Below, piece by piece: positions 2,680-56,192 of a stretch of 64,000 nt of DNA (positions within the stretch are counted from its first letter, which is position 1; each line of letters begins with the position of its first letter). The notes below the pieces were generated by a model. It was not told where the DNA came from and made no database searches. It saw only the letters and a list, made by a program, of their open reading frames with translations. Both the position numbers and the translations under genes were made by a program. The DNA is from Octopus sinensis (taxonomy: Eukaryota), in assembly GCF_006345805.1 (NCBI RefSeq), contig NC_042999.1, forward strand, positions 37,262,001 to 37,326,000, written 5' to 3'.

Positions 2680-2763
2680 GGAGAAGATGGTCAGCCACTA
2701 GAACAAGAAACCGAAGAAGGTCTCGTTACAAGCCATGCGTATGCTGTCACGAAAATTGCGACG
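2680..2763 (+). CDS. CAPN: Calpain, first exon in window (CysPc domain, catalytic His)
   Basis: tttttag|...|gtaag; 84 nt, phase 0/0; GEDGQPLEQETEEGLVTSHAYAVTKIAT matches calpain GLVxGHAYSVT. Paralogue identity unresolved. Confidence 0.95.
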
Positions 2764-2810
2764 GTAAGAAATTATCATCAAATCTCAATGTAACTAACAT
2801 TCATTAAGAA

Positions 2811-3113
2811 GTTTGTTCCTTCTCGAGCCGTGCCTGGCTCATAAGGGCTGGTTTTCCGGTTTCCTTGGCATATAAGTTCCCCACCTGAACGGGACACCGG
2901 TCCGTCAGAGGTGAGCTGCAAGATGCAGGAGGAAAGAGTGAGAGAAAGTTGTGGCGAAAGAGTCAGCAAAAGTTCGCCATTACCTTCTGCCGGAGCCGCG
3001 TGGAGCTTAGGTGTTTCGCTCATAAACACACACATCGCCCTGTCTGAGATTCGTACCTGCGATCCCTTGACCGCGAGTCCGCTGCTCTAACTACTAGGCC
3101 ATGTGCCTCCACA
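2811..3113 (-). mobile_element. tRNA(Arg)-like SINE, tail type 2 (resembles octopus OR-type SINEs)
   Basis: A/B-box head GTGGAGGCACATGGCCTAGT..; TSD CATTAAGAA at 2802-2810 and 3114-3122; lies 47 nt after the exon donor. Confidence 0.88.
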
Positions 3114-3346
3114 CATTAAGAATTATTTATACTAAAAAGTATCGCTACTAGATGATATATGATATATAGGAAAGTTTTAATATTAAACTACTTAGATATT
3201 TTCTTTCTAATTTTGGTACAAGGCCATTAATTTTGAGTGGATGGGGGTCTTTTATTTTATCGACCCCAGGGAGGCGGGGATGAAGGCAAAGCTTACTCGG
3301 TGGTATCTGAGCTCAGAACGTAAAGAGTCGGAAAATATTCCGCTAT

Positions 3347-3509
3347 AGGCGTAGGAGTGGCTGTGTGGTAAGTAACTTGCTTACCAGCCACATGGTTTCG
3401 GGTTCAGTCCCACCGCGTGACACCTTGGGCAAGTGTCTTCTACAATAACCTCGGGCCGACCAAAGCTTTGTTAGTGGATTTGGTAGACGGAAACTGAAAG
3501 AAGCCCGTC

Positions 3510-3542
<33 letters not shown>

Positions 3543-3812
3543 ATATTTATATGTATGTATGTATGTATGTATGTATTTATGTATGTATGTATGTATGTAT
3601 GTTTGTGTGTCTGTGTTTGTCCCCCAGCATCCGCTTGACAACCGATGCTGGTGTGTTTACATCCCCGTAACTTAGAGGTTCGGCAAAAGAGACCGATAGA
3701 ATAAGTACTAGGCTTACAAAGAATAAGTGTACTGGGGTCGATTTGCTCGACTAAAGGCGGTGCTCCAGCATGGTCGCAGTCAAATGACTGAAACAAGTAA
3801 AAGAGTAAAAAA
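3347..3812 (+). mobile_element. SINE family A (head AGGCGTAGGAGTGGCTGTGTGG, internal TA/TG microsatellite)
   Basis: tRNA-like head, CCTTGGGCAAGT, (TA)n(TATG)n, tail ending GAAACAAGTAAAAGAG; more than 10 copies in window. Confidence 0.88.
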
Positions 3813-4195
3813 AAGCAGTCTCTTGCTCTCCCGAGCTTACCCTCGAGGTATAGTGCCTATTTAACCCTTAGGTAAGCAAGACTGACTGACTGGTTCGCGT
3901 GACATCAGGATATTTTTTTTACCGGAAGATAGGATTTCATCTTAGCTCCCGTAACTGAGTAGGGTTTCATATCACCTTGAAGTTAAGGTGGATTACGGGT
4001 AAAATGACTGATGTTTTTAATCAAGACTATACAGTTTAAAATTGTCGTACCTATTTTTGGCTGAAATATCTTGATTTTTATAAGATTAGTAAAACCAAGA
4101 AAATCATCCGAAGACTACGCGAATTTAAACCATTTGACAGCGAATAGATTAAATAGTTTCAGGATCTACTATCAAAAATTATAGTGGTTACGACA

Positions 4196-4204
4196 TCAAC
4201 AACA

Positions 4205-4237
<33 letters not shown>

Positions 4238-4481
4238 GCCGACGCCAGGACCAGCAGCAGCATCACCACCATCACCACCACAACACCACCACCACCACCA
4301 TCACGCCATCACTACCACCACCACCACTACCACCACACCATCACCACCACCAGCACCTCCACCAGCACTTTCACCACCACCACCACCACCACACCACCAC
4401 TACCATCACACCATCACCACCACCACCGTCACCACCACCGTCACCACCACCGCCGTCGCTACTACTACTACTACTACTACA
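4196..4481. repeat. Compound trinucleotide microsatellite (ACT/CAG/CAC)
   Basis: Visible runs. Confidence 0.9.
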
Positions 4482-5117
4482 TTTATTCCTGTACTGTGCT
4501 GTGACCGAGTTTTTGAGTATCTTTAATTCCAAATAACCCTACAAAGATAAGTGAGAGAGGACAGCTGGATGGAGTCGAACAGCTTTAATTGAAAATTCTT
4601 GATAAATTTATACTGGAGTAAAACAAAACTCAGTGACGTTCATGGCTTTCTGTTAGACATTAGTTGCGCAAAAGAAGTATCCATAGTTCTAACCCTTTGC
4701 CCCATACAAATCATTTTCATAAGTTTTTAGTTATCCCTTGTTTCATACGTTCTGAGTAATATAAAGCTTTCCTTTAATAAATTATAAGTTACTCTGGAGG
4801 TTGAAAAATCGGGAATGTGTATCATATACGATGTGTGGACACCAAGGATGACATGTGATACAAGACAGGTTAAGTGGACACAACCGATTTTCAGACTTGG
4901 TTCTGATTTTTATATTTCTTGCTCTAAATCGATCTCCATTCTACTGTTAATTCATCGATCATTTTTTGATCGTTTATTTCTTATTTTGTTTTGATTTTAG
5001 CACAGTGACTCATTTAAATTCCGTTTACTCATTGAAGTTTCAGTTAAGATCATGAATTTAAGAATGTGTAACTATTTTACTTCCAAACGGGTTGTTATAC
5101 TGGTATGTGTAGTAGTA

Positions 5118-5506
5118 GTGGAGGCGCAATGACCCAGTGGTTAGGGCAGCGGACTCGCGGTCATAGGATCGCGGTTTCGATTCCCAGATCGGGCGTTGTG
5201 AGTGTTTATTGAGCGAAAACACCTAAAAGCTCCACGAGGCTCCGGCAGGGGATGGTGGTGATCCCTGCTGTACTCTTTCACCACAACTTTCTCTCACTCT
5301 TACTTCCTGTTTCTGTTGTACCTGTATTTCAAAGGGCCGGCCTTGTCACTCTCTGTGTCACGCTGAATATCCCCGAGAACTACGTTAAGGGTGCACGTGT
5401 TTGTGGAGTGCTCAGCCACTTACACGTTAATTTCATGAGCAGGCTGTTCCGTTGATTCGGATCAACCGGAACCCTCGTCGTCGTAACCGACGGAGTGCTT
5501 CCATCC
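5118..5506 (+). mobile_element. tRNA(Arg)-like SINE, tail type 1
   Basis: GTGGAGGCGCAATG..GTTTCGATTCCC head; TSD ATGTGTAGTAGT at 5105-5116 and 5507-5518. Confidence 0.9.
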
Positions 5507-5613
5507 ATGTGTAGTAGTTATTCTTGCTGGTGCATCATTACACACACTTATTTCAACTACAGATATATGTTCCAACTCTTTGCCTTATTAATGAGCTTTA
5601 ATATTTAGAGAGC

Positions 5614-5987
5614 CGTGGGTTCAAATGCTACTGAGGTCGACTTTGCCCTTCATCCTTTCAGGTTCGATAAAATAAGTACCAGTGGAGCACGGGGGTCGAT
5701 GTAATCGATTTGCCCTCTCCACCGAAATTGTTGGCCTTGTGCCAAAATTTGAAATCAATATTTAGAGAGCTGAAGGCGGCGAACTGGCAGAATCGTTACC
5801 GTGCCAGGCAAAATGCTTAGCGGCATTTCATCAGTCTTTACGTTCTGAGTTCAAATTCCACCGAGGTCGAATTTGCCTTTCATCCCTTTCAGAGCCGATA
5901 AAATAAGTACCAGGTGAACACTGGAGTCGATGTAATCGACTTATCCCTTTCTCCGAAGTTGCTGGCCTTGTGCCAAAATTTGAAATC
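5614..5987 (+). mobile_element. Two tandem family-M SINEs with old-type tail
   Basis: Tails GGCCTTGTGCCAAAATTTGAAATC; delimited by three copies of AATATTTAGAGAGC. Confidence 0.8.
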
Positions 5988-6409
5988 AATATTTAGAGAG
6001 CCGGAAACAATTACATAATTGCAGTGTTACAAGCACTTTTGATCTGCGACTATCTTACGATAGTAAAATTCTTTCTATTATAGGCACAAGGCCTATAATA
6101 GACGGAGGGGATGAGTCAATATCATCGACCTTACTATAGCTTTTTTAAGCTATACGCAAACTAGTGGAGATGAGAATACATTTATCAAAGATTTATTTAT
6201 TACTACATCAGGACTTAAGTCGCCAGTTATTTCTGTTTAGTTCATTCAGATTCGTTTAACACTGTTGACATTCTTTTGTTTTTCTTCTCCTACCGGAAGT
6301 CCCTTTTTTTTTGTTGCTGCTGACCAACTTCCTAGCTAACCCGCAGGATTCGTGGCAGTTCGTCTGTCACGAATCCTGCCCAACACACACAACAATATTA
6401 TGTAAATAT

Positions 6410-6645
6410 GGAAGGCGGCGAGCTGGCAGAAACGTTAGCACGCCGGGCGAAATGCGTAGCCATATTTCGTCTGCCGTTACGTTCGAGTTCAAATTCCGCC
6501 GAGGTCGATTTTACCTTTCATCCTTTCGGGGTCGATAAATTAAGTACCAGTTACGCACTGGGGTCAATGTAATCGACATAATCCCTTTGTCCGTCCTTGT
6601 TTGTCCTCTCTATGTTTAGCCCCTTGTGGGTAGTAAAGAAAAATA
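6410..6645 (+). mobile_element. Family-M SINE monomer, young tail
   Basis: Perfect 16-bp TSD AATATTATGTAAATAT at 6394-6409 and 6646-6661. Confidence 0.9.
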
Positions 6646-7187
6646 AATATTATGTAAATATCAACTTTGGTACAGAAGTACCGGCAGAATGATATTCCTG
6701 TAGCGCATGCAGACAATTTGGCCCAGCTAAGAATTTGAATGTCTAACTTCATGGCACTAATTTTTATCAAAGGTTTATTACTTTACGCACATCAGGGCTT
6801 AAGTCGCCAGCTATTTCTGTTTAGTTCACTCAGATTCGTTTCACACTCACTGTTGACATTCTTTTTTTTCTTCTCCTACCGAAAGTCCCTTTTGTTTTTC
6901 TACTGATCAACTTCTTAGCTAGCGAAGTTTCTGTCTACAGTTCGTCTGTCACGAATTCTGACTTTCATTAGTACTGAAAGGGTACTTATTTTAGCAACGC
7001 CGAAAGGAAGAAAAGCAACGTTGACCTTGGCGGAATCTGAACTTAGAATGTAAAGACGTACGAAATGTCGCTAAGAATTTTGTCCGGCGTGCTAGCGATT
7101 CTGTCAGCTCATCGTTTTTGAGTATCTTAAGATAAATTTTCTTTGCCATCCATCCATCCATCCATCCATCCGTCTGTCAGTCCGTCC

Positions 7188-7259
<72 letters not shown>

Positions 7260-7714
7260 TAGACCGACAGACTGCGATATTTTAGTCCCTAAGATATAAG
7301 AAGCGGGGGAATAATACTTGACGATCATAGCTGGAATGCCCTTAATCATAGGTCTGTTCAACCAAGGCTTACATGGGGCTAAGTGACTAACAAGAACTAC
7401 AACCGGAAAGTAAAATTCATAGAAATTAACAACATGGACCAGCAACAGACAAGGTATTTCTGCTTAAATCTTTACACACTATAAAAACAAACAAACAAAC
7501 AAAAGAAGTCAGGTGCTGGAATCCTATAGAAATAGAAACGCAGAATTGTTAAGCTTTTGTGTGAGTGACAAGGCTACAAAAGATATAATGAAACCTAAAG
7601 GTAGATATGAATACCGAGGTTTATTGTTGGACTAAAAACTACATTCCAACGTACCTAAAGCAATCTATTAAGGGAAAATCACGTGAGACCGAGAAAAATT
7701 CATAGTTTGAACCA

Positions 7715-8007
<293 letters not shown>

Positions 8008-8189
8008 GCAGTTAACAAACTTGAATAGATTCATAAATTCATAATGCATTGAAGAAGGAATTCTAATATTAGAGAACGATCGTTTTTTTTTTTTGTTTTG
8101 TTTTCTGACGGAAAGCTATGCTTTGAAACATTGGACAAACTTATTTACTGGCAGAGCTAATTTAATTTTATGGCCTTTATGAATCAACT

Positions 8190-8568
8190 GTGGAGGCGCA
8201 ATGGCCCAGTGGTTAGGGCAGCGGACTCGCGGTCATAGGATCGCGGTTTCGATTCCCAGACCGGGCGTTGTGAGTGCTTATTGAGCGAAAACACCTAAAA
8301 GCTCCACGAGGCTCCGGCAGGGGATGGTGGTGATCCCTGCTGTACTCTTTCACCACAACTTTCTCTTACTTCCTGTTTCTGTTGTGCCTGTATTTTAAGG
8401 GGCCGGCCTTGTCACTCTCTGTGTCACGCTGAATATCCCCGAGAACTACGTTAAGGGTGCACGTGTCTGTGGAGTGCTCAGCCACTTACACGTTAATTTC
8501 ACGAGCAGGCTGTTCCGTTGATTCGGATCAACCGGAACCCTCGTCGTCGTAACCGACGTGCTTCCACA
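8190..8568 (+). mobile_element. tRNA(Arg)-like SINE, tail type 1
   Basis: TSD TATGAATCAACT at 8178-8189 and 8569-8580. Confidence 0.9.
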
Positions 8569-9199
8569 TATGAATCAACTTAGCAAAACTGCTTTAAATG
8601 CAAAGTCTGCGCATACAAGCTGAGTCATTCTTACACTCAAACAGTAATTTTCACACTCAAGTAGAGTCTCATTCTCACACTAAAGTAGTATCATTCTCAA
8701 TCCCAAACGGTCATTCTAACAATAAATTAGTCATTCTCACACTCATACAGTCAATTTCAAACTCGAGCAACCATCATCACACTCAAGCACAGTTATTCTA
8801 GTAGTGAGAAATTTATAATAAATACATAAGCTATAAAAATGTCAGGATATTTTTTTCTTTTGATTCGTGTTCTAGTTTATTGTATATTTGATAAGATAGA
8901 CACAAGGCCAGAAATCTGGAGGGAACGGAAAAGTCGGTCATATTGGCCCAGTATTTGACTGGTAGTTTATTTTATCGGATCTGGGGGTATGCAAAGCGAA
9001 ATTGACTCCAGCGGGATTTCAACTCAGAATGTAAACAACCGAAATACCGCAAGATAGCTTGTCTGATGCTCTAAGGATTTTGTCTATACCACTTCAAGTT
9101 TACTATTTTAACCAATTAATGCCCATAGTATGTTTTAGAATAATTATCATTTCACCAACAAGTGAATTTTATAGAAAGATATTTATTTAAACATAGATG

Positions 9200-9790
9200 T
9201 TGGCTTTAAATTTTGGCACAAGTCCAGCAGTTTCGGGGAAGGGGCTTAGTCGGTTACATCGACCCCTGTGCTCAACTGGTACTAAGTTGACCTAGGCGGA
9301 ATTTAAACTCAGAACGTAGCATTTTACTCAGTATGCTAACGATTCTTATTTCTTTATTGCCCGCAAGGGGCTAAACATAGAGGGGATAAATAAGGACAGA
9401 CAAAGGGATTAAGTCGATTACATCGACCCCAGTGCGTAACTGGTACTTAATTTATCAACCCATAAAGGATGGAAAGCAAAGTCGACCTCTGCGGAATTTG
9501 AACTCAGAATGTAACGGCAGACAAAATACCTATTTCTTTACAACCCACAAGGGGCTAAACAGAGAGAGGACAAAAAGGACAGACAAACGGATTAAGTCGA
9601 TTATATCGATTCCAGTGCGTAACTGGTACTTATTTAATCGACCCCGAAAGGATGAAAGGCAAAGTCGGCCTCGGTGGAATTTGAACTCAGAACGTAACAG
9701 CAGACGAAATACGGCTACGCATTTCGCTCGGCGTGCAAACGTTTGTCTGTCCTTGTTTGTCCCCTCTGTGTTTAGCCCCTTGTGGGTAGT
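9200..9790. mobile_element. Cluster of family-M SINE units (mostly minus strand)
   Basis: Repeated body/tail units with junctions at about 9345 and 9525. Confidence 0.8.
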
Positions 9791-9834
9791 CAAGAAAAAG
9801 GTAAATTGAAATGAAATATCAAGTAAGATGAAAT

Positions 9835-10085
9835 TAACTTCCAGATGCCACCCAGGGGTGATTTGAAATCGGTTTTATTCCCCGATCCTACCTCTCTCTT
9901 CATGTTCCATGCTTCCAGGCGTCGGCGATCATGAGCCTTCTTGATATGTCTTAAGATTCATGACTTTCTTTCGGAAGGATTTTTGCAGTCGTTTCCCGTA
10001 GTCTTGTTCCAGTGTATTTACATTTTACGTTGCTAGTTTCCTGCCCTCTGGGGATTATCCTCGAGGCAGATGGCCTTTTTAACCA
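9835..10085 (-). mobile_element. Degenerate Penelope-like GIY-YIG C-terminal remnant
   Basis: Minus strand reads ..IHWNKT..RRRLEAWNMKR..GNKTD..W, similar to PLE RKIKEA.I...N.D.G tails; contains stops. Confidence 0.4.
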
Positions 10086-10339
10086 GGTGGGGAATATCTG
10101 GTGCACGTGACATCAAGATATTCGGATTACCGGAGGTAGGATTTCATCTTAGCTTCCGTAACTGAGAATGGTTTCATATCACTTTAAAGTTTAGGTGAAT
10201 TAGGATTAAACTTAAATTGCTTTTAAGGTGACAGCAGTCACTGGGCAGCGACTTCATATTACCCCTAATTCACGAACAATCTGATTCCTCAGGAAGGTAA
10301 CTCAACACCATTTCAGTTGGTTGTCAATTACAAATAAAT

Positions 10340-10503
10340 AGGGGCAGGAGTGGTTGTGAGGTAAGTAGCTTGCTTGCCAACCACATGGTTCCGTGTTCAG
10401 TCACACTGCGTAGCACCTTGGGCAAGTGTCTTCTACTTTAGCCTCCGGCCGACCAAAGCCTTGTGAGTGGATTTGGTAGACGGAAACTGGAAGAAGCCCG
10501 TCG

Positions 10504-10544
<41 letters not shown>

Positions 10545-10760
10545 ATATGTTTGTGTGTCTGTGTTTGCCCCCCCCCACATCACTTGACAACCAGTGCAGG
10601 TGTGTTTAAGCCTCCGAAACTTAGCGGTTCGGCAAAAGACACCAATAGATTAAGTAGTAGGCTTACAAAGAATAACTCCTGGGGTCGATTTGATTCGACT
10701 AAAGGCGGTGCTCCAGCATGGCCGCAGTCAAATGACTGAAACAAGTAAAAGAATAAAAAA
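10340..10760 (+). mobile_element. SINE family A
   Basis: Same head, internal (TA)n and tail as 3347. Confidence 0.85.
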
Positions 10761-12217
10761 ATAAACGAAAGAAATACAAACAAAATACTGATATTGTTCG
10801 AAACAATTATATTTTCAAGATTTGAATAATTACGTTTGACAGTATAGATTTGATAGAAAGCTGATCAATTTACCGAGAAACAGACTAAACTGCAGTAAAA
10901 ACAGAGAGTTAGATTATGTACATAGTATATATGATCAACTACATACTAGTGGTAACTATAACAATAAAATGAAAAGAAACGAATTATGTATAATTCATAA
11001 ACAGAATGGCGTTCAGTAGCCTAAAGCAAATGAAAATATTGATCCACAATTAGTTATGTGCAAGGCAGTACTGCCCGGTTATGCAAATACCCTATATAAT
11101 CAATAACATATTCACATTTAAATGGATTCATATTTTTTCTAACCTTAAATAGGGATTTCAGATAATGTTCCGTAGAGATAAGCGATTTTACTAACGGATC
11201 ATCAGATGCGGTTGGAAGTTAAATTCTAACATTGACGATGGTTTTCAAAACTGCTAGGGGACTAAAAGATGTCTAATGATATCTATTCTGGCTTTTTGAG
11301 TTCTGACTGTAACGTCTACCAAGCTGTATCGGTCTAAGTCGGCGGCCTTTCACTTGCACAAATATTGCTGGCGGAGAAAGGAGACGGCTTGCATGCATTG
11401 GCAACCACTAGTCTTACTCACAAATTTCACACTGGTCTGCATATACGTGTACATTTATCGATGGAGGCCCCAAGATAGGGGTCATAGTTTTCGCATTCAT
11501 CAATCTTTTCATTGTAGTTTTCAATATAAAGTCTTCAACAGACGATTAGTATTCTTTTACGTAGCTTTTCTTTTAAGATTCCTTTATATTACATTAATAT
11601 ACCATCTTTGAATTGCTTAGGGAAGCAGCAGCGTAACTAGGAAGTGGGGCAATGTGGGACGGTCCGCTTTGGACGACGCTTTTTAGGGGGTTACAGTTTT
11701 AGTCTGCTGTATAAGCCTGTATAAGTTACATTGGCCGGGGTTGGAGAATTCAAGAGCTACCGTAGCTGCATCACAATACAGAACATGGTTTCAGAAAAAA
11801 AAAAAATTTTTGTTTTTCTGTAATGCTATGATTTTTATCACCGAACTTCTACATGTATGCACGCACATACACACTCACACGCAAACATACACATATGAAT
11901 TTGTGGTGTACTCAATACTTGTAATGAGTTAAATAGTTATTAAACTATAGCGCCTTACTAGTGATATTTCATTACCCGGAATAGTATTACAGCACGATTT
12001 CGGCAACATGTCCTATTCATGTATCTCCATACAGGTTACATATATTGCATCATACCTTGATGCTGTGTGGATTGAGACCCCCGTTGACAGGCTACTGATA
12101 TCAAATAAAGTGTTAAATATTTACGACATGCAAATTAGTAGCTTCAGTTCTCTGTAGTTTCTAGATTTGTTGGGTATACAAACAAATTGTCTCTGAAACT
12201 GGTCAAAGTGACGTTGT

Positions 12218-12262
12218 CATCTCTGATGAGAATCCAATAAGGTTCGAAAATCGATTAAGACT
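12218..12262 (+). ncRNA. Minimal type-I hammerhead ribozyme motif
   Basis: TCT-CTGATGA-GAATC(CAATAA)GGTTC-GAAA-A(TCGA)T-TA-AGA; intact core, 5-bp stem II, palindromic stem III AATCGATT, UUA site. Confidence 0.7.
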
Positions 12263-12332
12263 TGTTCATCATTATTTTTTTTTCAATCTACGGAGAAATA
12301 GTTGTTCTTTTTATATATCTACTACATCGGTT

Positions 12333-12370
<38 letters not shown>

Positions 12371-12472
12371 GTAATAAAGTACTAGCCACGTACTGGGGTC
12401 AATGGCATCAACTAATCACCTATCAAAATCACTGGCCTTGTGCCTAAATTAGAAACCGTTGTTATATAGATA

Positions 12473-14114
12473 ATAGCTGAATTACTCGGCGTTGCCCAGG
12501 TTACTGCTGTTCTTATCCAGATCAGTGAACAACAAATACGAAGATATATTTTTTTTCTCATAACTATTTCAAGATATCTATATTTTATTAAAAAATACTC
12601 AAATTGTAATGATTATAGAATTTAGAACGGAAAATCTGTCAATCTTGAAGCACCTCAGGATAAACAATATTCATTGTGTAATTTTTTGTTGGTGTCCAAA
12701 TGAATAAATTGTTGCTGTTTCCAACTTGTGAGCAACCAACATAGAGTTGGCCATGAGAGGAGCATGTAATAGAGGGATGAAGCCCTACTAACTGGAGGGA
12801 TTGACTCTGAGATTTGTTAAATGAAATACCAAAACTTTGTTTTATTGGAAACTGAAGCCTCTGAAATTCAAATGAAATATCTGTTGGCATGAAAGGAAAT
12901 TTCGGAATAAAGACATTTTCTTCTTTATGACTTCCTGTTGTGATTGTTGCCTGTAGGACATGGGACTTTATGGAAGTAACAATTAAGCGAGTTCCATTAC
13001 ACAGGCGAGGTGGGTTAAGATTCTTAAGCAACAAATTGAGAGCATCCAGTTTTAGTGTCAAGTTATGCGCAGGTATCCCAGTGGGTTTAAGTGTGTTCAG
13101 AAATTCAACAGGGTATTGAACAGCCTGAACTTGATCGACTGTTGTATGAATTGATGGAAAAGTCATTTCTGATGTATCTGTTAATTTTTGAAGTTCATGA
13201 TTGAGTTTATCAACCATTTCTTTAGTTGGAGCCTTTATAGCTTTTTCACATAACATGTTTACGTTAGTGTAATTGACAATCACACACACACTCACACGAA
13301 CATACACTTCACATACAATGAAGCACACGTACACTCTCACATACACTGACATACGTATATGAATACAGGCACACACAGACATACATTTACGTAACGAACG
13401 CGCAAACACACACACACTCACATACACATACACACTCATATAAAATGTGTGGTGGTGGTCGTAGTGGTATAAAATGTCCTTTACTGTGTCGTACGTAACG
13501 GACGCGCAAGCATACACACACTCACAAACACATACACACTCATATACAAACTACGTCGTCGTCATCGTAGTATAAAATGTCCTTTACTGTCGTATGTAAC
13601 GAACGCGCAAACACACATACACACTGACAGGCGCATACACACTCATATATAAAATGTATCGTTGTCGTGGCGGTATAAAATGTCCTTTACTATTTCGTAC
13701 GCAAGGAAGGTGCAAACACACACACACTGACAGACATATATATATTCATATACAAAATATGTCGTCATCGTCGTGGTATAAAATCTCCTTTACCATGTTG
13801 TAGGTAACGAACGCGGAAACACACACACTGACATACACATTCATATACAAAATGTATCGTCGTCATCGTGGTATAAAATCTCCTTTACTATGTCGTACGT
13901 AACGAACGCACAAACACACATGCACATGCACTGACAGACACATAAACACTCATATACAAAATGTGTCGTTATCGTGGTATAAAATCTCCTTTACTATGTC
14001 GTACGTAACGAACACGCAAGCTCACACACACTGACAGACATATACACACTCAAATACAAAATGTGACGTAGTGGTGGTATAAAATGTCCTTTACTATAGT
14101 TGACTATAAAAAGA
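12473..14114 (-). mobile_element. Helitron deletion derivative with PIF1-type helicase C-terminus
   Basis: 5' A|TCTTTTTATAG; 3' hairpin CTGGGCAACGCCGAG then CTAT|T. ORF 12639-13517 has YPVEFLN..NGTRL..RLQFPI..INKSQ.QSL..HGQLYV..IVYPEVL. Confidence 0.9.
13380..14100. repeat. About 102-bp tandem repeat (7 units) inside Helitron
   Basis: GTATAAAAT(G/C)TCCTTTAC at 13467, 13570, 13673, 13776, 13871, 13977 and 14077. Confidence 0.9.
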
Positions 14115-14220
14115 TTATCTTCGAGAAAGTGTTATATTGTTTTAATCCAAATGAAAATAAAAATTACATGTTGTCATTCGCGGTGGAGCCGTTTGAGAAT
14201 GCATAGGGAACAGACAGACC

Positions 14221-14288
<68 letters not shown>

Positions 14289-14443
14289 AAGAATTATATA
14301 TATATAGAGAGAGATAAAATCGACTGAAAGCTGTTCAGCAAGCAAGATGTTTGGTGAGGATGGCTAGCTTTTCTAGCAACCTAAATATGACGACATGGAA
14401 AATAGTCCTATTAAATGTCCCTTTATAAATTTATTTTATCAAG

Positions 14444-14529
14444 GTTTCACTCCAAGGAAAAAAGGAATACTTGATTCGACTTCGTAACCCATGGGGTAAG
14501 ACCGAATGGAAAGGCAAATGGAGCGACAG
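14444..14529 (+). CDS. CAPN: Calpain exon (catalytic Asn)
   Basis: atcaag|...|gtatgt; 86 nt, phase 0/2; [28 protein letters not shown] matches LRNPWG..EW.G.WSD. Confidence 0.97.
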
Positions 14530-16287: not shown

Positions 16288-16562
16288 CTTTTTCTTTTAA
16301 TCCGAAAATGACAAATAGCATTTGTTTTATAAAATAAAATTGTTACTCTTTTATTTGTTTCAGTCATTTGACTGTGGTCATGCTGGAGCACCGCCTTTAG
16401 TCGAGCAAATAGACCCCAGCACTTATTCTTTGTAAGCTTAGTACTTATTCTATCGGTCTCTTTTGCCGAACAGCTAAGTTACGGGGTCGTAAACACACCA
16501 GCATCGGTTGTCAAGCGATGTTGGGTGGACAAACACAGATGCACAAACATATACATAGATAC

Positions 16563-16612
<50 letters not shown>

Positions 16613-16993
16613 GTCCCCGCTACCGAAACGGTAATTATTTCTACGCCAGCTATGTTGTTGTTGTTTTTGTCTCATTTGGTCTAAAGTCGTATGACAACCA
16701 CCGTTATATATATTTTGTTTATTCATTACTGTTTTCAATTTCGTTTTCGTCTCTTGTATTCACATCCGTCTTGTGCGTTCACATTCCTGTCTTCTACCAA
16801 GAAATCTAATGCTTACAGCTTAGTTTTTTTTCTTGGGGCTGGCCGAGTTGGAGCAAATATCAGAATTGAACAGCCGAAATTTGCTATGATGATTCGGTGT
16901 CTGACTGAAGATTGAAGGCTTCGAATGATTTGTCTGTGTTCCGTGTTCGTCCCTTCCTGTATTTCACGTTCATTATATATAAAAACATTCATT

Positions 16994-17871: not shown

Positions 17872-17949
17872 TGTGTGTGAGTGTGTGTGAGTGTGTGCGT
17901 TTGTTCGTGTGTGCATGCGTCAGTACTGAATGTTTTTTTTTTATATAAT

Positions 17950-18530
17950 CTTTACTCTAGGCACATGGCCCGAAATTTTTGGGGATGGGGGCCAGTAGAT
18001 TAGATCGACCCCAGTACGCTACTGGTACTTAATTTATCGACCCCAAAAGGGTGAACGGCAAAGTCGACCTCGGCAGAATTTGAATTCGGAACGTAAAGAC
18101 AGACGAAATACCTATTTCTTTACTACCCACAAGGGGTTAAACACAGAGAGGACAAACAAGGACAGACAAACGGATTAAGTCGATTATATCAACCCCAGTG
18201 CGTAACTGGTACTTATTTTAATCGACCCCGAAAGGATGGAAGGCAAAGTCGACCTCGGCGGAATTTGAACTCAGATCGCAGCGGCGGACGAAATACCTAT
18301 TTCTTTACTACTTATAAGGGGCTAAACACAGAGAGAACAAACGAGGACAGACAAACGGATTAAGTCGATTATATCGACCTCAGTGCGTAACTGGTACTTA
18401 ATTTATCGACCCCGAAAGGATGAAAGGCAAAGTCGACCTCGGCGGAATTTGAACTCAGAACGTAACGCAGACGAAATACCGCTAAGCATTCCGCCCGGCG
18501 TGCTAACGTTTCTGCCAGCTCGCCGCCTTA
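17950..18530 (-). mobile_element. Family-M SINE trimer (young, young, old tail)
   Basis: Flanked by AATGTT(T/G)TTTTTTTTATATAAT repeats; junctions at about 18110 and 18295. Confidence 0.85.
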
Positions 18531-35068: not shown

Positions 35069-35150
35069 GAAAAGAAAGATTGGAATACAGCCAGTTATAT
35101 AGACAGTTGGAAGCGGGACATTTCCAGCGGCGGTTCAGAGAGAAAGACAG
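35069..35150 (+). CDS. CAPN: Calpain exon (start of C2-like domain III)
   Basis: tttcag|...|gtaata; 82 nt, phase 0/1; EKKDWNTASYIDSWKRDISSGGSERKT matches W.....G.W....AGG. Confidence 0.93.
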
Positions 35151-35159
35151 GTAATAATA

Positions 35160-35556
35160 TTTTCTACTATAAGCACAAGAGCTGAAATTTGGGGGAGGGG
35201 GGTAAGTGGATTACATCGACCCCAGTACTCAGCTGGTACTTATTTAATCGACCTATAAAGGATGAAAGGCAAAGTTGACTCCGGCGGAATTTGAACTCAG
35301 AACGTAGCGGCAGACGAAATACCTATTTCTTTATTACCCACAAGGGGCTAAACACAGAGAGGACAAACAAGGACAGACAAACGGATTAAGTCGATTATAT
35401 CGACCCCAGTGTGTAACTGGAACTTATATAATCGACCCCGAAAGGATGAAAGGCAAAGTCGATCTCGGCAGAATTTGAACTCAGAACGTAAAGGCGGACG
35501 AAATATCGCCAAGCATTTTGCCCGGCGTACTAACGATTCTGCCAGCTCGCTACCTT
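35160..35556 (-). mobile_element. Family-M SINE dimer 9 nt downstream of an exon donor
   Basis: TSD AGACA(G/A)GTAATAAT at 35145-35158 and 35567-35580. Confidence 0.85.
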
Positions 35557-36090
35557 CCTGAAAGGCAGACAAGTAATAATGAGATTATACTTAAACCTCC
35601 ACTCAAACTTAAATCCCGTAACAAAACTAACAAATCTTTTTTGTTCTTCTTGCATTAATTAATTGGTTTCAAATTTTGGCACAAGGCCAGCAAGTTCGTG
35701 GATTAGTGGTGGTAGAATAAGACGATTAGATCAACCCCAATGTTCAACTGGTACTTATCTTGTCGACCCCAAAAGGATGAAAAGCAAAGTTGACTATGCT
35801 AACGATTCTGCCTGCTAACCGCCTTCACAACATTAAATATTGATTTCAAATTTTGGCACAAGGTTAGCAGTTTCGGGCGGTGGGGAAAGTCGATTATATC
35901 GAGCCCAGTGCTGAAATGGTATTTATTCTATTGACCCCGAAAAGATGAAAGGTAAAGTCAACCTCGGCGGAATTTGAACTCAGAACGCAGAGACGGACGA
36001 AATGTCACTGAACATTTTCTCGGCGTCCTAACGATTCTGCCAGCTCGCCACCTTTATACAATAAAAATATTTAAAGAAAAGAAACAACTA

Positions 36091-39565: not shown

Positions 39566-40143
39566 AGAAACTACTTCTGAAGTTGCCACGCAGTGAAATA
39601 GAACCCGAATCCATTGATTGCGAAGCAAGCTTCTTAACCATACAGCCATTTTTGCACTGATAGAACAATTATAAATTGAGTAACAATTCTGCAAAGATTT
39701 TCGAACCTCGTTGTCTAAATTAAAGTGAATTCAAGCAACAGTTCCTTTAGGGAAAGAGATATTCCAGTTTCTTGTGGTTGAATAGATCTGGCCATCTTTC
39801 TCTCGGAACAGAGCTTCAATTGTGAGTGATTTCTGCCGTGAGTTATGATTACAACAGTGAATCGGTCGGTCAGTATGTTGGTTTTCAAGCTAAAACCTGG
39901 AGATGGTACCTAACAAGTTTCATGCAGGATTTCATTAGTTCGTCTAAATCCAACGAATAAAATTTAATAATTAGGACGAAAGTGATTTCTTTAAGTAACA
40001 GCATCGCCGTAATGCCATGATATAGACTCACATTTATAGACTCACATGAAGGCAGAAAGCTGGCAGGATTGTCAGCACACCAGACAAAATGCTTAGCAGA
40101 ATTTCATTCGGGTTATAAAGAAATAAGAAACGTTAAAAAAAAA

Positions 40144-40470
40144 AGGCGGCGAGCTGGCAGAAACGTTAGCACGCCGGGCGAAATGCTTAGCCATATTTCG
40201 TCTGCCGTTACGTTCTGAGTTGAAATTCCGCCAAGGTCGACTTTGCTTTTCATCCTTTCGGGGTCGATTAAATAAGTACTAGTTACGCATTGGGGTCGAT
40301 ATAATCGACATAATCCGTTTGTCTGTCCTTGTTTGTCCCCTCTGTGTTTAGCTCCTTGTGGGCAGTAAAGAAATTGGTATTTCGTCTGCCGTGACGTACT
40401 GAGTTCAAATTCCGCCGAGGTCGACTTTGCCTTTCATCCTTCGGGGTCGATTAAATAAGTACCAGTTACC
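40144..40470 (+). mobile_element. Family-M SINE, 1.5 units
   Basis: Junction AAAGAAATTGGTATTTCG at about 40370. Confidence 0.85.
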
Positions 40471-40847
40471 ATGCTCTTCTCTCTCTCTCCCTCTCTCCTC
40501 CTCCTCCTCCTCTCTCTCTATCTCACACACACACATTTTGATGCTATTACAAAAAATGCTATTACAAAATAAAACGAAACTGAAAATAACGGTATATCCA
40601 AAATCTGAATGGCCACCACAACCGATTTTCAACCACCCTATAGTTGCTCCAGTTATTGCACACAGGTGTCTTTCACGATTACAACACATGGCCAAGTTCC
40701 TTGTCAAACAATTAAAACTCCAAGTAAAACTCTAAGATTATTCTACCCTTTTATTTTACTAACGTCGTATACTCTTTTCATTTTGTACTGCAATCCTACT
40801 CATTTTTCCAAATCCCATAATATTCTTCATTTCTTTTTCTTTCGAAG

Positions 40848-42679: not shown

Positions 42680-43020
42680 GCTGGCCTGGCTGTGTGGTAA
42701 AAAGCTTGCTTCCCGACCACATAATTCCGGGTTCAGTCCCACTGCGTGTCACCTTGGGCAAGTATCATCTACTAAATCCTCGGGCCGATTAAAGCCTTGT
42801 AACGGAAAGTGAAAGAAGCCTGTCGTATATGTATGTGCATGTGTGCGTGTGTGCGCGTGTGTTTGTCCCTCGCCACCGTTTGACAACCTGTGTTGGGGTG
42901 TTTATGTCCCGGAGATAACAGACTTTATGAAAATAAGTACTGGGGTCGATTCGTTCGACTGAAATTCTTCAAGGCGGTGCCCCAGCATGGCCGCAGTCTA
43001 ATGACTGAAACAAATAAAAA
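42680..43020 (+). mobile_element. Older family-A SINE ending 22 nt before an exon
   Basis: Head GCTGTGTGGTAAAAAGCTTGC; tail GACTGAAACAAATAAAAA. Confidence 0.8.
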
Positions 43021-43042
43021 TGTAAACGTATTTTCATTTCAG

Positions 43043-43257
43043 ATTAAGAAAAACGCCCCACAACCTCTTAGTGATGATAATTTCAGCGATGAGTCTTTGA
43101 GATTCGAATGTAGAGCCGAAGAAACAGAATGGCGCGAAAATACGAAGTATCTTACTCTGAAACCAGGAAAATACGTCATCATACCCTTTACACAGATGAA
43201 AAACAAAGAGTCTCGTTTTCTCTTGCGGGTTTTCTCTCAAACCAAAGTGGTTTCAAG
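43043..43257 (+). CDS. CAPN: Calpain exon (domain III C-terminal half)
   Basis: tttcag|...|gtcagt; 215 nt, phase 0/2; IKKNAPQPL...WRENTKYLTLKPGKYVIIPFTQMKNKESRFLLRVFSQTKVVS matches L.PG.Y+I+P.T....FLLRVF. Confidence 0.95.
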
Positions 43258-43346
43258 GTCAGTCAAACATTTTTCTTTTAAGTTGCAGTGTAGGGTACAG
43301 TAGGCCGTTACTTTTGTAAGTGAGTATGGCTTGGTTACATGTACCA

Positions 43347-53118: not shown

Positions 53119-53151
<33 letters not shown>

Positions 53152-54258: not shown

Positions 54259-54269
54259 TATATATATGA

Positions 54270-56150
54270 ATAAATAAATGGAGTTTAACGCAGGTGTAAT
54301 CAAATATTTTTACTTTCGACACATGTTTCGAAAATTCCACTGATACTATTCAAAAGAATAAATGGTATAAACAATGCAATCTTCTCCTCAGGAAAGTGAA
54401 AAAAGCGAAACTTGTCAATAAGACATTTTAGCAAAAAATTATGGATTTGTATAGCGATAGACAGAACGCTATTAATATTGTTTAAAAAAAAAACGTTATA
54501 TGATATAACGTCACAAGTAGCTAACAGAAAGAGTAGGGATACCAATAGTGAATGTTAAATATAAAGGAAATTAAAGTTTAAATTATATATAATGATAGAG
54601 ACTATTTATATGCACTAAATGTATGTTTTTGCCAATGCTTACATCTGTATGCTCGCTCTATAACCGTGTTTACTAGAGTATTTTTAGAAAAAATAATGAA
54701 AAATAGCTCAGAATTGCAAAGAAGACAAAATTCCTTGCCTTTGTCATATGGTATCGAAATTGAGAGTATCAACCATTCTAAATGAAATTGTTCATTGTGG
54801 TCTTTTAAATCCCAAATCAGTTTGCTGAGACCGGTACTATTGCGTTTATTTCTATCCCTAAATGTTGAGTAATGGATAGAAATTCTTTTAGATAACTCTA
54901 ACGATGTGCTTCCAATGTAAAATCGTACTTTATTACGAGTACTGATTATACACTGGTATATAGAATTTTTAATTTTAGAGTTACTTGACATAAACTTAAT
55001 TCTATTGGAATTGACTTCAGATACAATAACCTTGTTATTAATATTTCTAGAGGGTTGGATGGAATTAGCTAAATTAATGTTAGTATTAGTAAATGTATTA
55101 ATATTTAACAGTTTGTTATTATGAGAAGAGATAATTTGCAAGAGATTTTTTGTGTTTGAAAAACCCATCCTAACCTTATATGAATTGATAATAGAGTAAA
55201 ATCTAGAATTGTTTGGAAAATTCCTTGCAATAGCATGACGAAACAGCAGTGGGAGATTGGATTTAATTTGTCTCCCGTAAGGAATTATTAACCAAATATC
55301 TTTACTAGTATTCATAGCGTAATTACTTTTGAAGGTGTTATATTTACTTTTAGATCGATAATAGGGGATTAAATAAGGGTTATCTGCCTTCATTCGCTTT
55401 GTATCGGTGCGTAAGTTATGTTTGTTATCAATAATTCTTTTACGACTAGAAATCTTATCTACATTATTGAATTTACAATTAGACTGAGCAGAATCAATGT
55501 AGAAAATTTTCTCTGTATAACCTGCTTTAATTAAGGCAGAGTTATAGAATTCAGCGTTATTATTGAATATGTCAACATTAGCAGATAATTTAGATAATCT
55601 AAATGAAATATTCTTAACTAAGTTCTTAGTAATTGCTCCAGGATGATTACTAAATTTGCTAATGTACTTAAGATTGGTCAACGGTTTACGATATGGGAAA
55701 TAAGAGCCACTGTGTAAATTAAGCGTAATATCTAAAAAGTTGGCCTTCGTCATATCGTCATCAAAAAAATTTACTAAACTATTCTTAACTTTTTGTGCCT
55801 TTCGGTTGGAAACATTTTGGAGGTAAAGTAAACAATCATCACGATATAGACCTCCATAAATGTTAGGGAACTCTTCAGCCATTTCAAAAAGAATATATAT
55901 GCAGACCAAATCAGCTATCTGTGCTGAATCAGAACTTCCCATTGGTATATCGAAACTATCTGGTGTGTCTTTACGGACCCACAACTTATCATCCAATTTA
56001 ATAATAGATCTTCTGGCTGCCAACACAACATTAATTTCTTCTCGGGTGAGACCAGCTTTGTTATGAGCAAGCCAAAGTGCCTTATTAAGTACTATTGGAT
56101 TGATAGATGAATAAAAATTGGAAATGTCAAACTGGATAAACTTAGTACTA
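54270..56150 (-). mobile_element. Penelope-like element, 5'-truncated, with open RT + GIY-YIG frame
   Basis: ORF 54602-56026: PMGSSDSAQIADL, YGGLYRDD, NFLDITL, IYQC..FYIGST..RISIH, CLLCNSE. FIQFDISNFYSSI lies upstream across one frameshift. Confidence 0.95.
54312..54397 (-). ncRNA. Type-I hammerhead ribozyme in Penelope 3' region
   Basis: ACTTTC-CTGAGGA-GAAGATT..AATTTTC-GAAAC(ATGT)GTC-GAAAGT: 6-bp stem I, intact core, GUC site. Confidence 0.75.
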
Positions 56151-56192
56151 TATATTCACCGCACCTTGTATATATATATATTTGCTTTTCAG

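What the first reader, a model, noticed from the sequence alone, without database searches (positions are those of the whole stretch)
12218..12262. Intact minimal hammerhead ribozyme, sense to the calpain pre-mRNA
Seen: canonical CUGAUGA/GAAA core, stem II GAAUC/GGUUC, stem III that is the palindrome AAUCGAUU, UUA cleavage triplet, and only about 3 bp of stem I. Established: Penelope-like elements and retrozymes carry minimal type-I hammerheads that cleave as dimers through palindromic stem III. Inference: this copy is transcribed with the first visible calpain intron and could cut it, affecting splicing or yielding intronic RNA ends.
Basis: partly seen in the sequence, partly recalled or inferred. 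Interest (0 to 1): 0.7.

Follow-up and report, generated by a model that had tools for sequence, protein, structure and literature searches.

The report
Lone minimal hammerhead motif in calpain intron
A complete but very small hammerhead-ribozyme motif sits, in the sense direction, inside an 11.7-kb intron of an octopus calpain gene; it is most likely a stranded leftover of a Penelope-type retrotransposon and is unlikely to cut the calpain transcript by itself.

Summary
The motif is there exactly as described (12220-12260, +). It has a full hammerhead core, a 3-bp stem I, a 5-bp stem II, the loop-less 8-nt palindrome AAUCGAUU as stem III, and a cut site after A12257. It lies sense-strand in the intron between two calpain protease-core exons (2680-2763 and 14444-14529).

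A motif this good appears in about 0.1-1% of shuffled windows. So it is unlikely by chance here, though dozens are expected across a genome of gigabase size (genome size is assumed).

Octopus DNA is rich in this class. In 188 kb I found three independent loci with a loop-less 8-nt palindromic stem III, against 0.01 expected. One is a textbook case about 210 nt after the ORF of a 5'-truncated Penelope-like element in this window (54312-54397, minus strand).

The candidate itself has no Penelope coding remnant beside it, no second copy in the window or in 124 kb of other Octopus DNA, no tandem partner, and a shorter stem II than the confirmed examples. Family conservation could not be tested.

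Best reading (about 0.6): a solo relic of a Penelope-class minimal hammerhead, catalytically weak or inert. Chance: about 0.3. Functional intronic ribozyme: about 0.05. Interest is low.

The parts
12220..12222 (+). Stem I, 5' strand (UCU); pairs with AGA at 12258-12260
   Evidence: 3 bp only; the next positions are mismatched
12223..12229 (+). Catalytic core box CUGAUGA (C3-A9)
12230..12245 (+). Stem II hairpin: GAAUC / CAAUAA loop / GGUUC (5 bp, G10.1-C11.1 closing pair, one U-G pair)
   Evidence: pairing probability is only 0.06-0.17 in genomic context
12246..12248 (+). Core G12 A13 A14
12249..12256 (+). Stem III: 8-nt palindrome AAUCGAUU with no loop. It forms 8 bp only between two molecules; as a monomer, 2 A-U pairs plus a UCGA loop.
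12257..12257 (+). H17 = A; predicted scissile bond is 3' of this base
   Evidence: sequence
12258..12260 (+). Stem I, 3' strand (AGA)
11897..12332 (+). 436-nt segment carrying the motif near its 3' end. It is single-copy in all DNA available here. Putative 5'-truncated retroelement tail (inferred, not shown).
   Evidence: No match in the window or in 124 kb of other Octopus DNA. No Penelope-like protein remnant.
11855..11895 (+). Degenerate CA-rich microsatellite on the upstream side of the segment
12335..12369 (+). Perfect (AC)17.5 microsatellite starting 75 nt after the motif
   Evidence: base rate for such a neighbour is 0.116
2680..2763 (+). Calpain exon with the catalytic His (..GLVTSHAYAVTKIAT), followed by the donor GTAAGA
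2764..14443 (+). Calpain intron (about 11.7 kb) containing the motif, 9.46 kb from the donor and 2.18 kb from the acceptor
   Evidence: the spliced exons give an uninterrupted Peptidase_C2 match
14444..14529 (+). Calpain exon with the catalytic Asn ([28 protein letters not shown])
54312..54397 (-). Comparison object: Penelope-linked minimal hammerhead. Stem I 6 bp ACUUUC/GAAAGU, core CUGAGGA, stem II 7 bp with a long loop, stem III ACAUGUGU with no loop, C17.
54605..56155 (-). Comparison object: 5'-truncated Penelope-like element ORF (C-terminal part of the reverse transcriptase plus GIY-YIG endonuclease). Its stop codon is about 210 nt before the hammerhead; a (TA)n repeat starts 45 nt after it.

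Best explanation
The motif is a solitary, sequence-complete minimal type-I hammerhead of the kind carried by Penelope-like retroelements.

Most likely it arrived with the 3' end of a heavily 5'-truncated Penelope-type (or derived non-autonomous) retroelement that inserted, sense-oriented, next to a microsatellite in this calpain intron. It has since sat there as a single-copy relic.

This class needs two copies for catalysis. The two palindromic stem III strands pair between copies, and each core then cuts the other copy's UA site. This copy has no partner in cis, only 3 bp of stem I and no loop-loop contacts. It is therefore expected to be transcribed passively with the intron and to cleave very little or not at all, with no effect on calpain expression.

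Shown: the anatomy, the intron and strand placement, the rarity by chance, the abundance of the same architecture in Octopus DNA, and the absence of a partner in the window.

Inferred: the retroelement origin and the catalytic inertness.
For: - The motif is complete, and a motif this good occurs in 0.13-1% of shuffled windows.
- The architecture is a real, enriched class in Octopus DNA. In 188 kb (the window plus six O. sinensis / O. bimaculoides loci) the descriptor hit 6 times at 3 independent loci. All hits have a loop-less 8-nt palindromic stem III. Shuffles expect 0.07 hits, and 0.01 for that class; the reversed-sequence control gave 0.
- Two of those loci are clearly retroelement-borne. 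One lies about 210 nt after the ORF of a 5'-truncated Penelope-like element in this window. The other is four copies in an 872-nt tandem/inverted array in O. sinensis L009, with Penelope RT remnants in the same locus.
- A 3-bp stem I is not disqualifying. The hammerhead 465 nt after a full-length related Penelope ORF (L007) also has a 3-bp stem I and a loop-less palindromic stem III.
- All three Octopus loci share the layout 'hammerhead, 35-75 nt tail, dinucleotide microsatellite'. This fits the published 5' truncation, 3'-proximal hammerhead and microsatellite targeting of Penelope-like elements (PMC8557442).
- Inertness is supported by the lack of any second copy on the + strand and by unfavourable hammerhead folds. 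It also fits the published lack of monomer activity and low dimer activity for this class (PMC4209133, PMC6765202).
Against: - No Penelope coding remnant lies next to the motif.
- No other copy of the 436-nt host segment, or of this hammerhead sequence, was found in the window, in 124 kb of other Octopus DNA, or in metagenome or viral collections. Family membership and covariation are therefore untested.
- Stem II (5 bp, 6-nt loop, no 5' bulge) is much smaller than in the confirmed Octopus examples (7 bp with loops of about 45 nt) and than the published minimal-hammerhead consensus (7-8 bp). Compact motifs are the kind that arise most easily by chance.
- The microsatellite neighbour has a base rate of 0.12, so it is weak evidence.
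- The energy gap between the hammerhead dimer fold and the MFE (5.8 kcal/mol) falls within the range of the confirmed examples (2.2-7.5). Thermodynamics alone therefore cannot prove inactivity.
Confidence: 0.6

Rival explanations
1. Chance motif: the 41 nt are ordinary unique intronic sequence that happens to satisfy the hammerhead descriptor. It has no retroelement ancestry and no activity.
For: - It is single-copy in everything that could be searched.
- No transposon protein remnant is adjacent.
- The motif is compact, with short stems and loops.
- At 0.0013-0.012 matches per 64 kb, a genome of about 2-3 Gb (size from my own knowledge) would hold roughly 50-500 chance matches.
- Reviews warn that relaxed minimal-motif searches yield mostly false positives (PMC6155905).
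- Competing folds are more stable than the hammerhead fold.
Against: - The per-window probability is only 0.1-1%.
- The specific class (loop-less 8-nt palindromic stem III) is expected 0.01 times in 188 kb, yet it occurs at two other independent, clearly retroelement-borne loci in the same DNA. A genuine origin is therefore much more probable a priori than a chance one.
- Every core position, including the preferred G10.1-C11.1 pair, is canonical.
Confidence: 0.3
2. Functional intronic ribozyme: the motif self-cleaves in the calpain pre-mRNA, perhaps by pairing between two transcripts or with protein help. It would then influence splicing or produce stable intronic RNA ends, as proposed for the conserved intronic hammerheads of amniotes.
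For: - The core is intact and sense-oriented, 2.2 kb upstream of the 3' splice site.
- Conserved intronic type-I hammerheads exist in amniote genes such as RECK, CTCL and DTNB (PMC6155905).
- The authors who described this class suggested that in vivo cofactors may boost its activity (PMC4209133).
Against: - There is no partner copy in cis.
- Stem I is 3 bp and there are no loop-loop tertiary contacts.
- The hammerhead dimer fold is less stable than two free monomers.
- Stems I and III have about zero probability in context.
- A single minimal motif showed no detectable cleavage in vitro, and dimers cleaved poorly (PMC4209133).
- Amniote intronic hammerheads are canonical, stable and ultraconserved. 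This one matches no Rfam hammerhead model, and its conservation could not be tested.
- In vertebrates, hammerhead-bearing retrozymes are depleted from introns (bioRxiv 10.64898/2026.07.22.740005). That points to selection against active copies in genes.
Confidence: 0.05
3. The motif belongs to one of the neighbouring repeats: the Pif1/Helitron-like helicase element (12474-14100, minus strand) or the SINE fragment at 12373-12470.
For: Proximity only: the helicase ORF stop (12639) is about 380 nt away and the SINE fragment about 110 nt away.
Against: - O. sinensis paralogues of the helicase repeat align to 13891-12474 and stop there.
- None of the 12 or more SINE copies in the window has any similarity to 11000-12332.
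- The motif is on the strand opposite to the helicase.
Confidence: 0.02

Closest known systems
Minimal hammerheads of Penelope-like elements (Cervera & de la Pena 2014, PMC4209133; Lunse, Weinberg & Breaker, RNA Biol, cited in PMC6765202)
   Same: - Type I topology with a full catalytic core.
- Very short palindromic helix III that can only become stable by pairing two copies.
- Short helix I with no defined loop 1, and no loop-loop contacts.
- The motif lies a few tens of nt before an element-like 3' end that abuts a microsatellite.
- The same architecture is seen here in a Penelope-like element of this window, in O. sinensis L009 and in L007.
   Different: - No RT/GIY-YIG ORF or pseudo-LTR around it, no second copy within 50 kb, and no demonstrable sequence family.
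- Helix II is 5 bp with a hexaloop and no 5' bulged base, against 7-8 bp (7-10 bp in the examples found here).
Canonical metazoan type-I hammerheads in non-LTR retrozymes, satellite DNA and Schistosoma Sm-alpha (Cervera & de la Pena 2020, PMC7229834)
   Same: - Type I topology.
- Read as a monomer, helix III is '2 bp capped by a palindromic tetraloop' (AA-UCGA-UU), which is exactly how canonical animal hammerheads are described.
- Helix II of 4-5 bp with a small loop.
- Dimer-dependent activity in the weak-helix-III members (newt, axolotl).
   Different: - Not in a 170-400 nt tandem repeat.
- Helix I is 3 bp rather than about 6 bp, with no closing loop 1, so the conserved loop 1-loop 2 interaction is impossible.
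Conserved intronic hammerheads of amniotes (RECK, CTCL, DTNB; de la Pena & Garcia-Robles 2010, summarised in PMC6155905; Rfam HH9/HH10 from my own knowledge)
   Same: A type-I hammerhead lying sense-strand inside an intron of a protein-coding gene, thought to descend from retroelement hammerheads.
   Different: - Those are full-size, stable, tertiary-stabilised and ultraconserved across species.
- This one is minimal, is predicted to be unstable, matches no Rfam hammerhead model, and its conservation is untested.

Membership tests
Hammerhead ribozyme (any type) | Conserved core: C3 U4 G5 A6 N7 G8 A9, G12 A13 A14, A15.1-U16.1 pair, H17 not G | tested here: met
   All positions are canonical at 12223-12229, 12246-12249 and 12256-12257.
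Hammerhead ribozyme (any type) | Three helices radiating from the core | tested here: met
   Stem I 3 bp, stem II 5 bp, stem III 4+4 bp between two molecules or 2 bp within one. Marginal: the monomer fold is +3.3 kcal/mol.
Hammerhead ribozyme (any type) | Match to a curated covariance model (Rfam Hammerhead_1, _3, _II, HH9, HH10) | tested here: inconclusive
   No match at gathering score or at E<=10. The Penelope-linked control hammerhead at 54.3 kb is missed as well.
Hammerhead ribozyme (any type) | Site-specific self-cleavage giving 2',3'-cyclic phosphate and 5'-OH ends | not testable with these tools
   Needs in vitro transcription or end-specific RNA sequencing.
Penelope-like-element minimal hammerhead | Type I topology with minimal, palindromic helix III (dimer-competent) | tested here: met
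   AAUCGAUU with no loop. An intermolecular 8-bp helix forms in every dimer fold.
Penelope-like-element minimal hammerhead | Located in the pseudo-LTR, or 3'-proximal region, of an element encoding RT and GIY-YIG endonuclease | tested here: not met
   tblastn with the window's own Penelope ORFs and a profile HMM of 23 full-length relatives find nothing near 12 kb. Severe 5' truncation could explain this but is not shown.
Penelope-like-element minimal hammerhead | A second copy in tandem or nearby (<50 kb) to allow dimer formation (filter used in PMC4209133) | tested here: not met
   It is the only + strand hit in 64 kb. The other hammerhead (54.3 kb) is on the minus strand, with the different stem III ACAUGUGU.
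Penelope-like-element minimal hammerhead | Enlarged helix II (7-8 bp), often with an unpaired base at its 5' end | tested here: not met
   5 bp, 6-nt loop, no bulge. The confirmed examples found here have 7, 7 and 10 bp.
Penelope-like-element minimal hammerhead | Short helix I (4-5 bp; 2 bp in Drosophila variants) without a defined loop 1 | tested here: met
   3 bp. The Penelope-linked L007 hammerhead also has 3 bp.
Penelope-like-element minimal hammerhead | Member of a multi-copy consensus family with stem covariation | tested here: inconclusive
   No copy was found in 188 kb of Octopus DNA or in metagenome or viral scans. Whole Octopus genomes could not be searched with these tools.
Non-LTR retrozyme (canonical type-I hammerhead) | Embedded in tandem repeats of about 170-400 nt | tested here: not met
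   No tandem repeat covers 11897-12332.
Non-LTR retrozyme (canonical type-I hammerhead) | Helix I of about 6 bp with loop 1 contacting loop 2 | tested here: not met
   Stem I is 3 bp and cannot be extended.
Domesticated intronic hammerhead (amniote type) | Conserved at the orthologous intron position across species | not testable with these tools

The most novel reading that the evidence does not exclude
A single Penelope-class minimal hammerhead, stranded sense-strand in an octopus calpain intron, does cleave in vivo. It would do so through transient pairing of two nascent transcripts via the AAUCGAUU palindrome, or with a protein chaperone. That would give defined intronic 5'-OH and 2',3'-cyclic-phosphate ends 2.2 kb before the 3' splice site and would modulate calpain mRNA output. 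It would be an invertebrate counterpart of the amniote intronic hammerheads, built from a motif thought to be inactive alone.
Probability: 0.04. Interest if true: 0.6.

Novelty: new member of a known kind. Interest (0 to 1): 0.2.

Why it matters
If the motif is what it most likely is, it adds little. It is one more dispersed copy of a known ribozyme class, and it illustrates how truncated Penelope-type insertions scatter orphan hammerhead cores through introns.

Two points are useful:
- It is a caution for scans. Minimal hammerhead descriptors pick up orphan copies whose sequence is 'intact' but whose activity depends on a partner copy that is absent.
- Octopus DNA evidently holds several distinct families of loop-less palindromic-stem-III hammerheads, three in 188 kb. 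My two searches of the held papers found none that describes hammerheads in cephalopods.

Only if the orphan copy turned out to cleave in vivo would it bear on the open question of what intronic hammerheads do to their host pre-mRNA.

Tried and rejected
- **Rfam.** Gathering and permissive modes gave no hammerhead hit for the candidate. The test was calibrated and found uninformative, because the Penelope-linked control is missed too.
- **Second copy in the window.** Self-BLAST of 11000-13000 found only microsatellite and SINE matches. A relaxed descriptor on both strands found only the unrelated 54.3-kb hammerhead.
- **Penelope coding remnants near 12 kb.** tblastn and a profile HMM against the six-frame translation found none.
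- **Part of the Pif1/Helitron-like repeat?** Rejected: O. sinensis paralogues L003 and L004 align only down to 12474.
- **Part of the SINE?** Rejected: there is no similarity in any SINE copy.
- **Public collections.**
  - The exact stem II + stem III pattern in metagenomes gave 0 hits.
  - The stem II-only pattern gave two contigs carrying a type III hammerhead that merely shares the stem II sequence. These are not relatives.
  - Viral contigs gave 0 hits.
- **Orthologous intron.** It could not be reached. The calpain domain-III exon found no protein at all. The helicase query returned only 71-75% paralogues. All three protein searches are now used.
- **Octopus Penelope paralogues L001 and L002.** Their similarity does not extend to a hammerhead region.
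- **Thermodynamic discrimination.** The gap between the hammerhead dimer fold and the MFE is 5.8 kcal/mol for the candidate and 2.2-7.5 for the confirmed examples. I dropped this as an argument against authenticity.
- **Microsatellite bracketing.** The base rate is 0.116, so I kept it only as weak support.
- **Lunse et al. primary paper.** It is not held in the library.
- **Direct translation of long frames for Pfam.** I replaced it with motif-guided exon finding.

Full report
**1. The observation.** The + strand at 12220-12260 reads UCU-CUGAUGA-GAAUC-CAAUAA-GGUUC-GAA-AAUCGAUU-A-AGA. A purpose-written type-I hammerhead descriptor recovers it as the only hit on either strand of the window at moderate stringency. 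It reports stem I of 3 bp, stem II of 5 bp, and stem III of 4+4 nt with zero loop.

Every conserved core position is canonical, including the G10.1-C11.1 pair, and H17 is A12257.

**2. Is it more than chance?**
- The bare core pattern is not significant: 58 of 100 shuffles contain one.
- With the helices required (I >=3, II >=4, III >=3 bp), 15 of 1500 dinucleotide-preserving shuffles of the whole window, both strands, contain a match.
- At the observed strength (II >=5, III >=4), 2 of 1500 contain a match.

The motif is therefore unexpected in one 64-kb window (p about 0.001-0.01). A genome of a few gigabases (size from my own knowledge of octopus genomes) would still hold tens to hundreds of such matches by chance. 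Family or orthologue evidence is needed for certainty.

Rfam gives no hammerhead hit at gathering score or at E<=10. The same is true of the clearly retroelement-borne hammerhead at 54.3 kb, so Rfam cannot judge this class.

**3. Gene context.** A motif-guided scan found RNPWG on the + strand, and reading the + strand frames found the His exon. The two exons are:
- Exon 2680-2763: ...GLVTSHAYAVTKIAT, preceded by an AG acceptor and followed by the donor GTAAGA.
- Exon 14444-14529: [28 protein letters not shown], followed by the donor GTATGT.

Spliced together, they match Pfam Peptidase_C2 positions 204-254 without a gap (E=8e-20). A Calpain_III exon lies at about 42.9-43.3 kb.

The motif is thus sense-strand in an 11.7-kb intron, 9.46 kb from the donor and 2.18 kb from the acceptor. 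No calpain exon was seen before 2680, so 'first visible intron' is accurate.

The window is Octopus DNA at genus level. Its SINE (48058-48411) is 90% identical to copies in an O. sinensis locus.

**4. Immediate surroundings.**
- Downstream of the motif come 72 nt of AT-rich sequence and then a perfect (AC)17.5 repeat at 12335-12369.
- After that lie a SINE fragment (12373-12470) and, on the minus strand, a Pif1/Helitron-like helicase fragment (ORF 12639-13517, Pfam Pif1_2B) with a 103-nt tandem array.
- Upstream, a degenerate CA-rich tract lies at 11855-11895.

O. sinensis paralogues of the helicase repeat align only to 13891-12474, so the motif is not part of that element. No SINE copy shares its sequence.

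The 436-nt segment 11897-12332 that carries the motif has no other copy in the window or in 124 kb of O. sinensis and O. bimaculoides loci. It has no Penelope-like coding remnant beside it.

**5. Comparison material found along the way.** A relaxed descriptor found a second hammerhead on the minus strand at 54397-54312. Its features are:
- stem I of 6 bp, core CUGAGGA, stem II of 7 bp with a long structured loop;
- stem III ACAUGUGU with no loop, and C17;
- position about 210 nt downstream of the stop of an ORF (56155-54605) that matches positions 243-702 of a profile built from 23 full-length Penelope-like proteins. That is a 5'-truncated Penelope-like element;
- a (TA)n repeat starting 45 nt after it.

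A related full-length Penelope ORF from another animal (L007) has a hammerhead 465 nt after its stop. That one has a 3-bp stem I, a 10-bp stem II and a 10-nt loop-less palindromic stem III.

An O. sinensis locus fetched for an unrelated reason (L009) holds four copies of a third hammerhead. It has stem I of 5 bp, stem II of 7 bp, stem III ACAAUUGU with no loop, and A17. The copies sit in an 872-nt tandem/inverted array, each + strand copy followed after 35 nt by (TA)n, with Penelope RT remnants elsewhere in the locus.

Across 188 kb of Octopus DNA the descriptor hit six times, at three independent loci. All hits have a loop-less 8-nt palindromic stem III. Shuffles expect 0.07 hits, and 0.01 for that class; the reversed-sequence control gave none.

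**6. What this means for origin.** The candidate's architecture is one that is truly abundant in Octopus DNA and is borne by Penelope-type elements. Published descriptions agree on four points (PMC4209133, PMC6765202, PMC8557442):
- these elements carry minimal type-I hammerheads with a tiny palindromic helix III and a short helix I;
- the hammerheads lie near the 3' end;
- insertions are heavily 5'-truncated;
- insertions favour microsatellites.

On density alone, a genuine origin is far more likely than chance: two other independent loci in 188 kb against about 0.003 chance matches of this class per window.

Several things temper that:
- The candidate is much more compact than the confirmed Octopus examples. 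Stem II is 5 bp with a hexaloop, against 7 bp with loops of about 45 nt.
- It lacks the 5' bulge of the published consensus.
- It has no demonstrable relatives.
- The microsatellite neighbour is weak evidence, with a base rate of 0.116.

I put about 0.6 on 'relic of a Penelope-class element' and about 0.3 on chance.

**7. What this means for function.**
- As a monomer, the hammerhead secondary structure costs +3.3 kcal/mol. The MFE is -5.3 and uses a UGAU/AUCG helix that buries core bases.
- As a homodimer, the intermolecular 8-bp stem III always forms. The full double-hammerhead, however, is -9.7 kcal/mol. That is less stable than two free monomers (-10.6) and than the dimer MFE (-15.5), where a UCUC/GAGA hairpin sequesters CUGAUGA and stem II is lost.
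- The confirmed examples also show gaps of 2.2-7.5 kcal/mol to their MFE, so this measure does not discriminate. In those examples, though, the double hammerhead is at least as stable as two monomers and stem II persists.
- In +/-50 to +/-200 nt of genomic context, stem II has a pairing probability of 0.06-0.17 and stems I and III about 0.
- No partner copy exists on the same strand in 64 kb. The 54.3-kb hammerhead is antisense to calpain and its stem III is not complementary.

Published experiments on this class found no detectable cleavage for a single motif and low activity even for dimers (PMC4209133). In vertebrates, hammerhead-bearing retrozymes are depleted from introns.

From my own knowledge, introns cut co-transcriptionally by an inserted hammerhead can still be spliced (exon tethering; Dye et al. 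2006). Even some cleavage need not alter calpain output. Cleavage of the calpain pre-mRNA by this copy is therefore unlikely, at about 0.05.

**8. Comparison with known systems and novelty.** By anatomy the motif works like a Penelope-type minimal hammerhead. It can also be read as a canonical animal helix III, with 2 bp and a palindromic UCGA tetraloop.

Membership in the Penelope family is not established. The contextual criteria were tested and not met: an element ORF or pseudo-LTR, a nearby second copy, and an enlarged stem II. The family-consensus criterion could not be tested.

It is not a retrozyme, because there is no tandem repeat. It is not an amniote-type intronic hammerhead, because it lacks tertiary contacts and gives no Rfam hit. 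At best it is a new, orphan member of a known kind.

**9. Limits.**
- Whole Octopus genomes were not searchable with the tools.
- The orthologous calpain intron could not be fetched. The calpain exon query returned nothing and the helicase query gave only paralogues.
- The metagenome hits that share stem II are a type III hammerhead and are not relatives.

Noticed in passing
window 54262-56155 (minus strand); hammerhead at 54397-54312: A 5'-truncated Penelope-like element (ORF matching profile positions 243-702: C-terminal RT plus GIY-YIG endonuclease). It has a textbook minimal hammerhead about 210 nt after the stop (stem I 6 bp, stem II 7 bp, loop-less stem III ACAUGUGU). The element ends 45 nt later at a (TA)n repeat.
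   Followed up: yes
L009 (O. sinensis CM016877.1) 6865-8118: Four 98-99% identical copies of another hammerhead (stem I 5 bp, stem II 7 bp, stem III ACAAUUGU with no loop, A17). They are arranged as inverted pairs within an 872-nt tandem repeat, each + strand copy followed by (TA)n. Penelope RT remnants lie at 16316-16895 of the same locus.
   Followed up: partly
L007 (ENA ERZ21867824 ctg122932l) 6667-6748: A hammerhead 465 nt downstream of a full-length (734 aa) Penelope-like ORF, with only 3 bp of stem I, a 10-bp stem II and a 10-nt loop-less palindromic stem III. It shows that a 3-bp stem I occurs in element-borne copies. The sister locus L008 gave no hit with the same descriptor.
   Followed up: partly
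window 12474-14100 (minus strand): A Pif1/Helitron-like helicase C-terminal fragment (ORF 12639-13517, Pif1_2B domain) joined to a 103-nt tandem array (13388-14097, 6.9 copies). The same helicase-plus-array arrangement recurs at 80% identity in O. sinensis L003, so the two form one repeat family.
   Followed up: partly
window 53007-54011 (minus strand): A 334-aa ORF beginning MTIGTRTDPNYANLFVGYVE, which looks RT-like, lies directly downstream of the Penelope-like element. It has no Pfam hit and only a marginal match (E=1.8) to the Penelope profile. Its C-terminal half is microsatellite-derived. The family is undetermined.
   Followed up: no
window 58922-59644 and 60686-61378 (minus strand): Two near-identical reverse-transcriptase C-terminal fragments (weak RVT_1 match, non-LTR type) lie 1.8 kb apart, separated by TA/CA-rich low-complexity sequence. 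This is probably a local duplication of a LINE fragment.
   Followed up: no
window, e.g. 350-800, 9266-9710, 17930-18480, 35150-35560, 40140-40510, 46830-47180, 48058-48611: A tRNA-like-headed SINE is present in at least 12 copies on both strands, often as 184-185-nt head-to-tail units. It is 80-90% identical to copies in the O. sinensis and O. bimaculoides loci.
   Followed up: partly
L005 188-212 and L006 529-553 (JGI metagenome contigs, minus strand): Two near-identical 1189-nt metagenome contigs carry a compact type III hammerhead (UUCCG-UA / GGUGAAC hairpin / CUGAUGA / GAAUC-UAAA-GGUUC / GAAA-CGGAA). Its stem II sequence is identical to the candidate's. The shared stem II looks like coincidence rather than common ancestry.
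   Followed up: partly
window 42890-43303 (+): The Calpain_III-domain exon returned no protein at all from the 5.8-billion-sequence search, although Octopus proteins are in that database (Penelope and Pif1 hits came from O. sinensis and O. bimaculoides). The calpain orthologue appears to be missing from, or unannotated in, the indexed proteomes.
   Followed up: no
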